A stretch of DNA of 63,115 bases, counting the filler, from Olpidium bornovanus S191 (Eukaryota; Fungi; Olpidiomycota), in NCBI GenBank assembly GCA_017911155.1. It is 31 parts of 31 records of this genome, joined end to end, with 100 filler letters (N's around TTAATTAATTAA, not from the genome) between each part and the next. Parts side by side here need not be neighbours in the genome. Positions count along the whole stretch, not along the records: positions 8,270 to 9,743 come from JAEFCI010012502.1; 30 more parts are not named here. One strand, given 5' to 3'. Shown piece after piece: positions 6,489 to 9,743 of the stretch (its first letter is position 1; the number at the start of each line of letters is the position of its first letter). The notes below the pieces were generated by a model. The model was not told the DNA's origin. It saw nothing but the letters and a program-made list of their open reading frames with translations, and ran no database searches. Made by a program: the position numbers and the translations under genes.

Positions 6489-8299
6489 AAAAAAAGAATG
6501 GAATGAGACTCGGGTTCCGCCCTTCGCCCCTCAGTAGAGCGCATTCAAGGGACCGCAGGGGCGCACGTGGATGCTTCGGGGGTTCGTCTGATGGGCGCCT
6601 ATGCAATATATGTTTGGGCGAGGTAGAATGCGTCAGGAACGGGTCTCTGGTTAGGACGGGGAACGGGCGTTCTGGGCAGGAAACCGGCGATGCCTCGGGG
6701 TGCAGCGCAGCCAACATAACAATTAAACTCGAACCATCCTACTTCTGCCCGCGCAGTAGATTGCTCGCGGCAGGTGACCGGGGAGGGGGGGGGTGAAGGG
6801 GAGGCAAAGGGTCGAGGAGGGGAGCGGGGGGGATGGAGACGGAGTTCTTAAAAATGCGACGGCGCGGGATCACGGCCAACACGTCTTCCATAATTTTTTT
6901 TTTGTTTTTTTTTGCCCGACCGCCGATTATTTCCCCGGTGGGAAAATCTCCGCGGCAGCCGCCATGGAGACGACGAAGCGGCGCGCGTGCGCTCTCGTCG
7001 CTTCCCGGGCGTGGGAACGTATCGCCGCAGCGCGCGGGCTGGCGGACACGTTTCCGTATGACGTCACCATTCATCCAGCCCCCGGAGCGCATTATATAGC
7101 CCCGTCCGTTCCTCTCTCTCTCGTTCTCTCTTTAACTTTTTTTTTTTTTTTTTTTTTTGTGCGAGACGAGATCCTCTCCTGGTAGCAGCAGCCCGTCAGC
7201 GGGACGGAAAAAAAAAAAAAAAAGTGTCCCTCCTCGCAAGACAAACCCGTGCGGGAATCGTCTTCACCCCGAGGCACAGCACACCGGCGCACACACCGGC
7301 GCTCCGCAAGGTTTGCCCGACCGGATCTGCTTGGCGACCAGGCAAAAAAAATACTTGGGGCGTAACGCTTTCGGCAAGGTCCCGGCGGCGCGGCCCTCCG
7401 CAGCCCGTCCATGGAACGGAATGTGTGAAGTCACGCTTTTCTGCCTCCCACCCCCCCACCCCGCCCTACGCTTTGCCGGCGAGCTTGAGAGGCTGGATTT
7501 TTTTTTTTTTTTCGAGGATGTAAAGTTCGGTTGGCCTGTTGTCCCTTCCTCGCGTGACGGAGACAATAGGACCAGACTTCGCGTGCGGATCCGAACCACA
7601 AAAGCGTGGTGGTGGCGCGCGGGGCGGTAACTGTGGGGGGACGGGAAACGGAGTGGGCGGCCCCGCTTTCCGCCACTTCGCTCCCCCTGTGAGAACCAAA
7701 ATCCCAGCGGGTTCGGGTAAATTTGCACGGCGTCCCGGAACGACCCCGATCCACAGAAACCAACAGGCAAAATCGTCGGATTTCAAAAAAAAAAAAAAAA
7801 TAAAATAAAAAATAAAAAATAAAAGTAAAAATAAAAATAAAAATAAAAAACCAGGGTTTATGTTTTTCTCGCGCAGGCGGCGGCGGGACTCCGCCGTCTG
7901 CCGGGTGACTCCCGCTCGGAGAGCGAGCGGCGCCTCTTCCGGCACGTTCTAGACCTGCTGACGTCCAATTTCCTTTTTTTTTTTTTTTTGTTCAAGAATT
8001 TCGATTCTCTTCCTCTCTGGTTCGGACCCCGCCTTCGCCCGTGGACACTGTGCCGCAGGAGAAAAAAAAATGATCGAGCGGCGAACCCTGACCCCGCTTT
8101 GTACTCGGGCAGCGAAATGGCCTGCGTTCGGCGCCCGGGAATCGCGATCCCGGAGGCAGCAGGCGCATGNNNNNNNNNNNNNNNNNNNNNNNNNNNNNNN
8201 NNNNNNNNNNNNNTTAATTAATTAANNNNNNNNNNNNNNNNNNNNNNNNNNNNNNNNNNNNNNNNNNNNCATGCATTTTCACGAGGATCGATTTGTGAC

Positions 8300-8527
8300 G
8301 GTGAGCCCACTCATCGTGACGAAGGTTTTTCGGAGTCCGGTGCTAATGGCTCATAATCTGGGTTATCCTGTGTACCCGTTTGCTAAAGTGGGGTCCGGAC
8401 ATTCGCGACAATTACCTTCTCAAAGGTTTCGCCGGTGAAGGCGATGTGACAGGTTGCTTTCTCAGCGCGAAGGGTCTCCATCTCGTGCTGGCGGACGAGG
8501 AGCAACAAATTCCAGTAATGGTTCTAA
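8300..8527 (-). CDS. Possible exons of an unidentified protein
   Basis: Open segment NHYWNLLLLVRQHEMETLRAEKATCHIAFTGETFEK bounded by AG and GTAATT; a possible next exon reads DNPDYEPLAPD. No family recognised. Confidence 0.3.
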
Positions 8528-9001
8528 TTCGGGCAAGTTCTGAGCGTTTCGCAGGGTGTCGAGCTGCTCGAAGCACGAGGACGGCCCCCGCGGTCACGAC
8601 GGGCTCTCTCGGCTCCGACGCGTCAAAAGGTTGTGACCTGACGGCGGACGCGCAGAGGGAAACGGCCGTTCAGTGTGGCGTGTGGTTTCGAAATGTTCCC
8701 GGCGGGGGAGAAAACGAAGCCGGGGGAGGCTCTTCGCGCAACTACGGGCGCGCGAAACCGTCGTATTCTGTCGGAGGGAGCCTTTTCTGCGGAGGTTGCG
8801 CTCGCGCGGACAGTATCTGGTGGGGCGAAACCGCGAAAAAGTTGGAAACGCCGAGTTCCCGCGCCTTGCATCGCAGACCACCGTCACCGGCGCTCGCTTG
8901 TTTGCCGCTCGTCCCACGCGACCTCGCCCGTCACAGCTCATCAGAACCGGTGCCTCGTTCAATCCCCCGCTTTTCGTGAACTAGTACAGCCCGCCAAAGC
9001 C

Positions 9002-9743
9002 ATGGAGTCTCAAACGGCACACAAGTCTGACGACATCGAGGACCTGAAGCCCTGCGTGCCGATGGTATCTGCCACGCCTCATTTGGTGGACCGCAATCCG
9101 GAAATTCCAGGATCTGCCCTCTGGCCCGTCCTTACATTGTTGAACATGCTCGTTTCGTGTCGCACAGTACAACGCCTGCACGATCCGCGGCCTGGAAGCC
9201 GGCGCTACGATGCTCTGGTGCCGATGCGGTTTGTCGAAGAAGCGGGACGGCCTGTGGTGTGACAACAGTTGCGACGGCACAGGGTTCACTCCGCTAAAAT
9301 GGATCGTGCCGCGGACAATCAACTTCACCGACGAAAGCTGCGGCGCTGGCCGTGGCGGCCGGTGGTCAATGTGCAACTGCAAATATACGAAGACACCGCC
9401 GATATGCGACGGGACGCGTGAGTTAACTCCTTTGCTTAAAGCTGTCTGGTAAACCGGCGCTATGTTTCTGCTCATAATAAGTCGCTATCATCGTGGCCAA
9501 ATAACCAGCCCGAGCCCGCTTTGTTTCATAGACACGACGCTTCCGCTTAAATATCTCAAGCAGAGAGAGGATTGCGCGGAGGATCACAAGCTCGTGGAGA
9601 AGCTGTGCGTGAAATGCGGCTACGTGCCGTGCCGGCCGCAGGAGGAGATTCGAAACCATTCAGACGAGAAGAATGAGTTACCAGGGACTGCCCCTACGAA
9701 GCCGCCCTCTTCCGGCGCAGCGGCAGCCGAAAACGCAAACATG
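9002..9743 (+). CDS. Two-CDGSH iron-sulfur domain protein (CISD3/MiNT-like)
   Basis: Exons 9002-9064, 9168-9417 and 9532 onward. Motif 1 is WCRCGLSKKRDGLWCDNSCDGTGFTPLKW; motif 2 is CNCKYTKTPPICDGTH (H split by the intron). The C-terminus has C..DH...LCVKCGY. Confidence 0.88.

What the first reader, a model, noticed from the sequence alone, without database searches (positions are those of the whole stretch)
9216..9290. CDGSH protein with a natural His-to-Cys swap at the first [2Fe-2S] site
Seen: site 1 reads C-R-C-G-L-S-K-K-R-D-G-L-W-C-D-N-S-C-D-G-T-G-F (TGC at 9270-9272), while site 2 is canonical, ending PPICDGTH. Known: CDGSH (NEET) clusters are 3Cys-1His, and the His gives pH- and redox-labile cluster release; the engineered mitoNEET H87C mutant has a more stable cluster, a lower potential and poor transfer. 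Aligning with PxCDGSHxGTGF places Cys at the His position, with loss of the Pro and a short insertion. Inference: an asymmetric protein with one stable 4Cys cluster and one labile 3Cys-1His cluster, plus a third C-terminal Cys/His group (C..DH...LCVKC).
Basis: partly seen in the sequence, partly recalled or inferred. Interest (0 to 1): 0.7.

Follow-up and report, generated by a model that had tools for sequence, protein, structure and literature searches.

The report
Tandem CDGSH protein, natural four-cysteine site
This is a real three-exon gene for a two-site CDGSH (NEET/CISD3-like) iron-sulfur protein in which the usual histidine ligand of the first site is a cysteine; this kind of natural variant was described in 2011 and recurs in related fungi, so it is a good but fairly ordinary example.

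Summary
Bases 9216-9290 encode WCRCGLSKKRDGLWCDNSCDGTGFT, and TGC at 9270-9272 is Cys56 of a three-exon gene (9002-9064, 9168-9417, 9532 to the piece edge). Site 2 is canonical once intron 2 is removed, because its His codon is split as C|AC.

In relatives from early-diverging fungi and other opisthokonts this position is His in about 90% of sequences, Cys in the rest, and never any other residue. It is therefore the ligand position. His to Cys needs two base changes, so a single miscall cannot explain it.

The swap is not unique:
- At least six other lineages in the same subfamily carry it (Terramyces/Boothiomyces, Gorgonomyces and four unnamed metagenome or read-archive sequences).
- Lin et al. 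2011 reported His-to-Cys in one motif of tandem CDGSH proteins.
- Tetrahymena complex IV subunit COXFS, a solved structure, has the same 4Cys plus 3Cys-1His layout.

What this gene adds is a two-residue insertion with loss of the motif's proline. Several Cys-type relatives also have an altered loop here; no His-type relative does.

One stable 4Cys cluster plus one labile cluster is the most likely reading, but it is untested. I rate it a new member of a known kind, of modest interest.

The parts
9002..9064 (+). Exon 1 (Met1-Met21, MESQTAHKSDDIEDLKPCVPM). It carries the subfamily's N-terminal DIEDL..KPCVP motif at 9032-9061.
   Evidence: for the translation. The motif aligns with 27 homologues. 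The Basidiobolus gene has an intron at the same place, after KPCVPM.
9065..9167 (+). Intron 1 (GTATCT...CACAG, 103 nt, phase 0).
   Evidence: Removing it restores the conserved ...KPCVPM|YNACTIRGLEAG... sequence seen in orthologues.
9168..9417 (+). Exon 2. It encodes both CDGSH-type sites up to the first base of the site 2 His codon.
   Evidence: The exon 2 peptide alone gives Foldseek top hits 3tbn and 6avj at probability 1.00.
9219..9272 (+). Site 1, a four-cysteine variant of the CDGSH motif: Cys39 (9219-9221), Cys41 (9225-9227), Cys52 (9258-9260) and Cys56 (9270-9272, TGC, at the His ligand position). The spacing is C-x-C-x10-C-x3-C.
9243..9254 (+). The loop segment R-D-G-L, which replaces the orthologues' Q-P. 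It is a two-residue insertion and loses the motif proline.
   Evidence: In one search, none of the 27 homologues has an insertion here. In one search, 110 of 110 His-type relatives keep both the loop length and the Pro.
9372..9417 (+). Site 2, a canonical CDGSH motif CNCKYTKTPPICDGT(H): Cys90, Cys92, Cys101 and His105. The His codon is C at 9417 plus AC at 9532-9533.
   Evidence: This column is His in 50 of 50 subfamily sequences.
9418..9531 (+). Intron 2 (GTGAGT...TTCATAG, 114 nt, phase 1). It splits the His105 codon.
   Evidence: Read without splicing, the frame gives CDGTR and then a stop at 9450-9452. The Basidiobolus gene also has an intron in or next to its CDAAH motif.
9532..9743 (+). 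Exon 3, still open at the edge of the piece. It holds the linker helix, the C-terminal Cys/His group and a low-complexity tail (…PGTAPTKPPSSGAAAAENANM).
   Evidence: The orthologues end 4-20 residues after the C-x2-CG motif.
9573..9620 (+). The third Cys/His group, C119-x3-H123-x6-C130-x2-C133-G. It is a candidate extra metal site.
   Evidence: These columns are at least 90% conserved in alignments that were not selected for the motif. In the AlphaFold model of the Basidiobolus orthologue the region has pLDDT of about 86-93. No Pfam family matches the tail.

Best explanation
The piece carries an intact three-exon gene for a small soluble protein with two CDGSH-type [2Fe-2S] sites in tandem. 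This is the fold of bacterial type 6 CISD proteins and human MiNT/CISD3. The protein belongs to an opisthokont subfamily marked by an acidic N-terminal DIEDL..KPCVP motif and a C-terminal C-x3-H-x6/7-C-x2-CG tail. In this organism the His ligand of site 1 has been replaced by Cys (CAY to TGC, two base changes), and the loop before the third Cys has gained two residues and lost its proline.

Most likely mechanism (inferred, not shown): site 1 still holds a [2Fe-2S] cluster, now bound by four cysteines. As in engineered His-to-Cys NEET mutants, that cluster would be acid-stable, of much lower potential, and a poor cluster donor. Site 2 would keep the labile, proton-coupled 3Cys-1His cluster. The protein would then act as a one-sided donor or sensor with a fixed second cluster.

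Shown here: the gene model, the position of the Cys on the ligand column, the restriction of that column to His or Cys, and the recurrence of the swap in relatives. Inferred: cluster occupancy, stability, potential and cellular role.
For: Gene model and codon. The position of intron 1 is shared with Basidiobolus.

Family and fold: phmmer gives 3tbn_A at 2e-10 and 6avj at 5e-07. Foldseek on the exon 2 model gives 3tbn and 6avj at probability 1.00. The Basidiobolus orthologue model has pLDDT 86.2 and matches 3tbn at TM 0.80.

Ligand column: all 27 first-round homologues have His. The subfamily alignment has His 36, Cys 6 and nothing else, and site 2 is His in 50 of 50.

Cysteines are retained: all four site 1 Cys are kept in every Cys-type relative, although these share only 41-53% identity with the window outside site 1. 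That argues for continued metal binding. TGC or TGT was confirmed in three other assemblies.

Precedents: engineered His-to-Cys NEET proteins keep and stabilise the cluster (PMC6006223; TgApiCox13 H49C/H85C in PMC10263302). Tetrahymena COXFS has WCDGLC at site 1 and is described with two Fe-S clusters.
Against: No cluster occupancy, stability or potential was measured or can be computed here. Site 1 departs from the motif in more than the ligand: it has x10 spacing instead of x8, has lost the Pro, and reads CDNS rather than CDGS. The AlphaFold model of the exon 2 peptide is only moderately confident over the loop (pLDDT 66 for residues 21-30). Loop length and Pro are invariant in His-type relatives but variable in Cys-type ones. 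That could mean relaxed constraint on a site that no longer does the ancestral job. The source organism was not identified, so neither a canonical paralogue in the same genome nor expression of this gene could be checked.
Confidence: 0.6

Rival explanations
1. Site 1 is a degenerating or repurposed site that no longer holds a [2Fe-2S] cluster. It is empty, or it holds a structural Zn bound by four cysteines. The protein works with the site 2 cluster only.
For: Lin et al. 2011 describe degenerate motifs in 17% of tandem CISDs. The window has lost the motif Pro, has two extra loop residues and has N for the motif's G. Among seven Cys-type lineages, four have lost the Pro or changed the loop length (to 3, 4, 5 or 7 residues), against none of 110 His-type sequences. 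Four-Cys knuckles commonly bind Zn (general knowledge).
Against: When the His is replaced in this subfamily, the replacement is always Cys. Cys is the one other residue known to keep the cluster, and it is two mutations away from His. All four cysteines survive in every Cys-type lineage despite roughly 50% overall divergence. Engineered and natural 4Cys CDGSH sites do hold [2Fe-2S].
Confidence: 0.27
2. The Cys is an artefact (sequencing or assembly error), or the locus is a pseudogene or decaying paralogue.
For: Only one assembly of this locus is available. No closely related sequence was found in the protein collections or in JGI metagenomes. The insertion beside the swap is unique to this sequence.
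Against: His (CAY) to Cys (TGC) needs two adjacent base changes, and the in-frame 6-nt insertion is a separate event. The reading frame is intact over three exons with canonical GT..AG splice sites. Every other conserved motif is retained (N-terminal DIEDLKPCVP, site 2 and the CHCC tail). The same swap is encoded in independent assemblies of other species.
Confidence: 0.05
3. A different register applies: the true motif is C56-D-G-T-G (CDGTH with His changed to Gly) and WCDNS is an insertion. Site 1 would then have only three ligands and bind nothing.
For: By eye, CDGTG resembles CDGTH. His-to-Gly degenerate motifs do exist (PMC3174974).
Against: Every alignment places W-C-D-N-S on the orthologues' W-C-D-N-S, followed by His. 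The G-T-G-F after it matches the orthologues' x-G-T-G-F. The Asp after Cys56 falls on a variable column (I, K, V, R, T, S, A, E, D). Relatives with CDDSCSGT, CDESCAGT and CDNSCDGTAF show the same register without a CDG after the Cys.
Confidence: 0.03

Closest known systems
Type 6 tandem CDGSH iron-sulfur proteins, including human MiNT/CISD3 (PDB 3TBN; 6AVJ)
   Same: Both are single chains with two CDGSH-type motifs forming a pseudo-dimeric fold. They are the best sequence hits (3tbn_A at 2e-10, 6avj at 5e-07) and the best fold hits. Site 2 matches the consensus motif exactly.
   Different: Site 1 is 4Cys with a longer, Pro-less loop. The protein has an acidic N-terminus with no obvious mitochondrial presequence (read by eye, not tested). 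It also has an extra C-terminal C-x3-H-x6-C-x2-CG module that 3TBN and MiNT lack. The Foldseek alignments cover only 84-87 of 145 residues.
Natural His-to-Cys variants of tandem CISDs (Lin et al. 2011, PMC3174974)
   Same: One of the two motifs has Cys in place of the His ligand while the other stays canonical. That is exactly the class described in that paper: 17% of type 5/6 proteins have a degenerate motif, and about half of those have His changed to Cys. My own count among 173 nearest representatives was about 11 with Cys at a His position.
   Different: That paper surveyed mostly bacteria and found no CISD in 99 fungal genomes. The present case is eukaryotic, from an early-fungal-type subfamily, and combines the swap with a loop insertion.
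Tetrahymena thermophila complex IV subunit COXFS (PDB 7W5Z chain FS) and ApiCox13 of apicomplexans
   Same: The layout is the same. Site 1 is WCSCGISQSGPWCDGLC, with Cys at the His position, and site 2 is CNCKFSANAPFCNNTH. COXFS is described as carrying two Fe-S clusters, and TgApiCox13 H49C/H85C mutants keep their clusters (PMC10263302).
   Different: COXFS is anchored in complex IV by a C-terminal transmembrane helix and keeps the canonical x8 spacing and the Pro. The window protein has no such helix in the part seen, and it is only distantly related (E=7.6e-06).
Engineered His-to-Cys NEET mutants (mitoNEET H87C 3LPQ, NAF-1 H114C 4OOA, At-NEET H89C 3S2R, MiNT H75C/H113C 6AVJ)
   Same: They have the same ligand exchange, and they are the basis for predicting a stable, low-potential, poorly transferable cluster (PMC6006223).
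   Different: They are laboratory point mutants in an otherwise unchanged loop. Here the exchange is natural and comes with a loop indel.
Cys-type orthologues in the same subfamily (Terramyces sp. JEL0728, Boothiomyces sp. JEL0866, Gorgonomyces haynaldii, and four unnamed sequences: P0037 from a JGI metagenome, P0064/P0182 from Logan and JGI, P0189 from ENA, P0185 from an unnamed NCBI record)
   Same: They share the subfamily architecture and have Cys at the site 1 His column. Several also lack the Pro or have a changed loop length, for example CGLSKLWCTGDC, CGLSSSFECDNSCDGTAF and KERIWCDDSC.
   Different: The window is the only one with a longer loop (x10). Outside site 1 it is no closer to them (41-53% identity) than to His-type fungi (up to 59%). 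It does not group with them in trees: 7 of 200 bootstraps gave it a Cys-type-only sister group.

Membership tests
CDGSH iron-sulfur domain family (Pfam PF09360, zf-CDGSH) | Significant match to the family profile or to solved members | tested here: met
   Pfam gives 28.7 bits, E=1.7e-06, just under the curated cut-off of 29.5. phmmer against PDB gives 3tbn_A at 2e-10, 6avj at 5e-07 and 7w5z_FS at 7.6e-06. Orthologues annotated with PF09360 match at E down to 3e-38.
CDGSH iron-sulfur domain family | Consensus motif C-X-C-X2-(S/T)-X3-P-X-C-D-G-(S/A/T)-H, as quoted in PMC5311916 | tested here: met
   Site 2, CNCKYTKTPPICDGTH, fits at every position after splicing.
CDGSH iron-sulfur domain family | The same consensus motif at the first site | tested here: not met
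   Site 1 is C-R-C-GL-S-KKRDGLW-C-D-N-S-C. It has x10 spacing instead of x8, no Pro, N for G, and Cys for His. It is a derived variant of the motif, not the motif itself.
Tandem-motif CISD (type 5/6; MiNT/CISD3 class) | Two CDGSH-type modules in one chain forming the monomeric pseudo-dimer fold | tested here: met
   Two modules lie at residues 39-56 and 90-105. The exon 2 model hits 3tbn and 6avj, but at low confidence (pLDDT 66.6, TM about 0.58). The orthologue P0002 gives pLDDT 86.2 and TM 0.80 to 3tbn.
Tandem-motif CISD (MiNT/CISD3 class) | Binds two [2Fe-2S] clusters | not testable with these tools
   This needs expression and spectroscopy. It is only inferred from ligand conservation and from mutant precedents.
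Human-type CISD3/MiNT orthologue | Mitochondrial matrix protein with an N-terminal presequence and no extra C-terminal module | tested here: inconclusive
   The N-terminus MESQTAHKSDDIEDL is acidic, and a conserved CHCC tail is present. No targeting predictor was available. The architecture differs from MiNT, so I do not file it as a strict CISD3 orthologue.
Natural 4Cys variants of tandem CISDs (Lin et al. 2011) | Cys at the His ligand column of one motif, with the other motif canonical | tested here: met
   for the window. The class is described in PMC3174974.
Opisthokont CHCC-tailed CISD3-like subfamily (defined here) | N-terminal (D/E)-I-E-D-L..(K/R)-P-x-V-P and C-terminal C-x3-4-H-x6-7-C-x2-C-G after site 2 | tested here: met
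   The window has DIEDLKPCVP at 9032-9061 and C119/H123/C130/C133-G at 9573-9620. These columns are at least 90% conserved in alignments A1 and A4.

The most novel reading that the evidence does not exclude
The His-to-Cys swap at site 1 has arisen several times independently in early-diverging fungi. Each time it frees the cluster-binding loop from its otherwise absolute constraint on Pro and length. This would mark an adaptive shift in which site 1 becomes a fixed, low-potential redox or structural centre, or changes its metal or cluster type in the enlarged loop, while site 2 alone does cluster transfer or sensing. If so, these proteins are natural experiments that separate the two roles of NEET clusters.
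Probability: 0.15. Interest if true: 0.5.

Novelty: new member of a known kind. Interest (0 to 1): 0.3.

Why it matters
NEET/CDGSH proteins are studied because the single His ligand makes their [2Fe-2S] cluster labile and pH- and redox-sensitive. A 2018 review still states that all known NEET clusters are 3Cys:1His (PMC6006223). Natural proteins that pair one 4Cys site with one 3Cys-1His site are ready-made controls for asking which cluster does the transfer or sensing. This gene is one more such case, from a little-studied opisthokont subfamily with an extra conserved Cys/His tail. It also shows that loop constraints relax once His is replaced. It does not reveal a new principle, because the variant class and a solved example already exist.

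Tried and rejected
I used the exon 2 peptide (window:9168-9416) instead. Its AlphaFold model is only moderately confident (pLDDT 66.6), and no coordinates are returned, so ligand geometry could not be measured.

2. I tried to identify the source organism and failed. No protein above 56% identity turned up in two word-indexed searches and one full profile search, and the JGI metagenome scan found nothing. The best guess is an early-diverging fungus, with nearest relatives Basidiobolus, Endogone and Rhizoclosmatium. The piece is 58% GC with introns of about 100 nt.

3. Upstream region 8270-9001: Pfam found nothing in the longer ORFs on either strand. The long ORFs there look like GC-driven noise.

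4. Neighbour-joining trees with bootstraps are poorly resolved for a protein of about 120 columns. They argue against a single origin of the Cys types (0 of 200 bootstraps monophyletic) but cannot count the events.

5. I considered the alternative register, CDGTG as a His-to-Gly motif, and rejected it on the alignments.

6. The 13 'SH' cases from the regex count are not His-to-Ser. Checked members such as P0009 and P0034 read CDGKSH, a one-residue insertion before the His.

7. The 100% conservation of the CHCC motif is circular, because that set was selected for the motif. I rely on A1 and A4 instead.

Full report
**1. What is in the sequence**

The piece (8270-9743, 58% GC) carries a split gene on the + strand.
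- Exon 1 is 9002-9064 and encodes MESQTAHKSDDIEDLKPCVPM.
- Intron 1 is 9065-9167 (GTATCT..CACAG).
- Exon 2 is 9168-9417.
- Intron 2 is 9418-9531 (GTGAGT..TTCATAG).
- Exon 3 runs from 9532 to the edge of the piece and is still open there.

The spliced product seen so far has 175 residues.

Site 2 is CNCKYTKTPPICDGTH. Its His105 codon is split by intron 2 as C|AC. Read without splicing, the frame gives CDGTR and soon stops, so the canonical site 2 depends on the splice.

The model is supported by the conserved peptide it restores across both junctions. The Basidiobolus orthologue also has an intron at the same place after KPCVPM, and another in or next to its CDAAH motif.

**2. Family**

- Pfam zf-CDGSH scores 28.7 bits (E=1.7e-06), just under the 29.5 cut-off.
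- Against solved structures the best matches are the type 6 tandem CDGSH protein 3TBN (2e-10), human MiNT/CISD3 6AVJ (5e-07), Tetrahymena complex IV subunit COXFS 7W5Z_FS (7.6e-06) and a Tetrahymena mitoribosomal CDGSH protein.
- An AlphaFold model of the exon 2 peptide is modest (pLDDT 66.6), but it retrieves the same four structures.
- A model of the full-length Basidiobolus orthologue is confident (pLDDT 86.2) and superposes on 3TBN at TM 0.80.

**3. Is Cys56 at the ligand position?**

Yes. The 27 first-round homologues come from Endogone, Basidiobolus, many chytrids, Blastocladiella, Conidiobolus and sea urchins, with at most 56% identity to the window. All read WC.CGLSKxQPWCDxSHxGTGF. The window reads WCRCGLSKKRDGLWCDNSCDGTGF.

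So W-C-D-N-S aligns residue for residue, Cys56 falls on the His column, and RDGL replaces QP. That is two extra residues and a lost Pro.

The other conceivable register, CDGTG as a His-to-Gly motif, is not supported by any alignment. Relatives that read CDDSCSGT, CDESCAGT and CDNSCDGTAF contradict it.

**4. How unusual is it?**

A profile search of 1.84 billion representatives found 3354 relatives, 36 of them at E<=1e-30. The close subfamily is opisthokont-wide. It includes early-diverging fungi, Fonticula, Pigoraptor, Amoebidium, cnidarians, molluscs, annelids and echinoderms.

Within the subfamily the site 1 fourth-ligand column is His in 36 sequences, Cys in 6 and nothing else. Site 2 is His in 50 of 50.

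Cys-type relatives are:
- Terramyces sp. JEL0728 and Boothiomyces sp. JEL0866 (WCDESC)
- Gorgonomyces haynaldii (CGLSKLWCTGDC)
- P0064/P0182, from a Logan read-archive assembly and a JGI metagenome (CGLSSSFECDNSCDGTAF)
- P0037, from a JGI metagenome (WCDDSC)
- P0189, from an ENA metagenome (KERIWCDDSC)
- P0185, from an unnamed NCBI record (QPFCDNQC)

I read the codon in three of their assemblies: TGC in Terramyces, TGC in the Logan contig and TGT in the JGI contig. The chytrids B. salamandrivorans and Entophlyctis helioformis keep His.

Among the 173 nearest representatives, about 11 have Cys at one of the His positions. This agrees with the literature. Lin et al. 2011 state that one motif is degenerate in 17% of type 5/6 CISDs, and that in about half of those the His is replaced by Cys (PMC3174974).

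Tetrahymena COXFS has the same asymmetric layout: WCDGLC at site 1 and a His at site 2. It is described as carrying two Fe-S clusters in the 7W5Z structure (PMC10263302). Fungal CISD3 homologues were reported in 2017 (PMC5311916).

**5. Real or artefact?**

His (CAY) to Cys (TGY) needs two adjacent substitutions, through Tyr or Arg. The 6-nt in-frame insertion is a further, separate event. Everything else that is conserved in the family is intact in the window, and the same swap is encoded in other genomes. An error or a pseudogene is therefore unlikely, at about 5%. Reads from the source organism could not be consulted.

**6. What the pattern says about function**

Three points argue that site 1 still binds a metal centre.
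- When the His is lost in this subfamily, it is always replaced by Cys. Cys is the one residue known from mutants to keep the cluster, and it is not a single-step neighbour of His.
- All four cysteines are retained in every Cys-type lineage, although these share only 41-53% identity with the window outside site 1.
- Engineered His-to-Cys proteins (mitoNEET H87C, NAF-1 H114C, At-NEET H89C, MiNT H75C/H113C, TgApiCox13 H49C/H85C) keep a [2Fe-2S] cluster. That cluster is stabilised, also at acid pH, and the potential drops towards ferredoxin values (PMC6006223; PMC10263302; structures listed).

By extrapolation, the window protein should have one stable, low-potential 4Cys cluster and one labile 3Cys-1His cluster. 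I give this 0.6.

The main rival, at 0.27, is that site 1 has lost its cluster or binds Zn. The evidence for that is the altered loop. 110 of 110 His-type relatives keep the loop length and the Pro. Four of seven Cys-type lineages have lost the Pro or changed the length to 3, 4, 5 or, in the window, 7 residues after CGLS. That covariation is a small new observation. It fits either a relaxed constraint once the proton-coupled His is gone, or slow decay of the site.

**7. One origin or several?**

Neighbour-joining trees without the site 1 columns never recover all Cys types as a clade (0 of 200 bootstraps). They give the window a Cys-type-only sister group in only 7 of 200. Outside site 1 the window is closest to His-type Basidiobolus, Rhizoclosmatium and Endogone, at 55-59% identity. 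The trees are weak because there are only about 100 columns, but the data favour recurrence over a single inherited swap.

**8. The third Cys/His group**

The group C119-x3-H123-x6-C130-x2-C133-G (9573-9620) is conserved in at least 90% of homologues in alignments that were not selected for it. It lies in a confidently modelled region of the orthologue, with pLDDT of about 86-93, and has no Pfam match. MiNT and 3TBN lack it, and the Foldseek alignments stop at 84-87 columns. It is a candidate extra metal site of unknown metal. This feature belongs to the whole subfamily, not to this gene alone.

**9. Verdict**

The gene is a new member of a known kind, a natural 4Cys variant of a tandem CDGSH protein. 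Its one twist is an enlarged, Pro-less loop. Interest is 0.3.

Noticed in passing
window 9573-9620 (C119, H123, C130, C133-G); same columns in alignments A1 and A4: A C-x3-H-x6/7-C-x2-C-G module follows site 2 in nearly all members of this opisthokont subfamily and is confidently ordered in the AlphaFold model of the Basidiobolus orthologue. It has no Pfam match and no counterpart in 3TBN or MiNT. It is a candidate third metal site, with the metal unknown.
   Followed up: partly
C-termini of subfamily proteins (e.g. P0036 Crassostrea, P0029 Pigoraptor, P0021 Lytechinus); the window tail is cut at 9743: 33 of 90 members, mostly animals and other holozoans, end exactly five residues after C-x2-CG with ...[V/I/K]-[P/V]-[D/E]-[F/W]-COOH, for example CGWVPDF, CGWVPEW and CGIKVDF. 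This resembles the CIA targeting-complex recognition tripeptide [LIM]-[DES]-[WF] (PMC10245660), but position -3 does not match it. It hints at cytosolic maturation. Most fungal members have other tails, and the window's C-terminus is not seen.
   Followed up: partly
window 9032-9061 (DIEDLKPCVP) and the N-termini of homologues: The subfamily has a conserved acidic N-terminal motif, (D/E)-I-E-D-L followed by K-P-C-V-P, and no obvious mitochondrial presequence, unlike matrix-located MiNT. In three divergent members (P0024, P0025 and P0027) a DIEDL-like motif sits at the C-terminal end instead.
   Followed up: no
site 1 loop, window 9243-9254; relatives P0063, P0064/P0182, P0189: Loss of the motif Pro and changes in loop length occur only in sequences that also have Cys at the His position: 0 of 110 His-type sequences against 4 of 7 Cys-type lineages. 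This covariation has not been corrected for phylogeny.
   Followed up: partly
L003 2501-2888 (Terramyces sp. JEL0728, KAJ3275707.1); also the Boothiomyces model P0174: The deposited gene models appear mis-spliced, because their products lack the C-x-C of site 2. The genomic DNA reads ...RYSICA then TG|GTAATTG...GTAG|C AAA TAT..., which would restore CACKYTKDPPICDAFH.
   Followed up: partly
window 8416-8481, minus strand: A possible short first exon of a divergently transcribed gene: ATG at 8481-8479, METLRAEKATCHIAFTGETFEK, followed by a GTAATT donor at 8415-8410. It has no Pfam match and is too short to search. The rest of 8270-9001 shows no recognisable coding sequence.
   Followed up: no
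P0010 (Chytriomyces hyalinus, 284 aa): The CDGSH orthologue is annotated as a fusion with a Roadblock/LC7 (LAMTOR2) domain, PF03259. This is probably a merge of two neighbouring genes rather than a real fusion.
   Followed up: no
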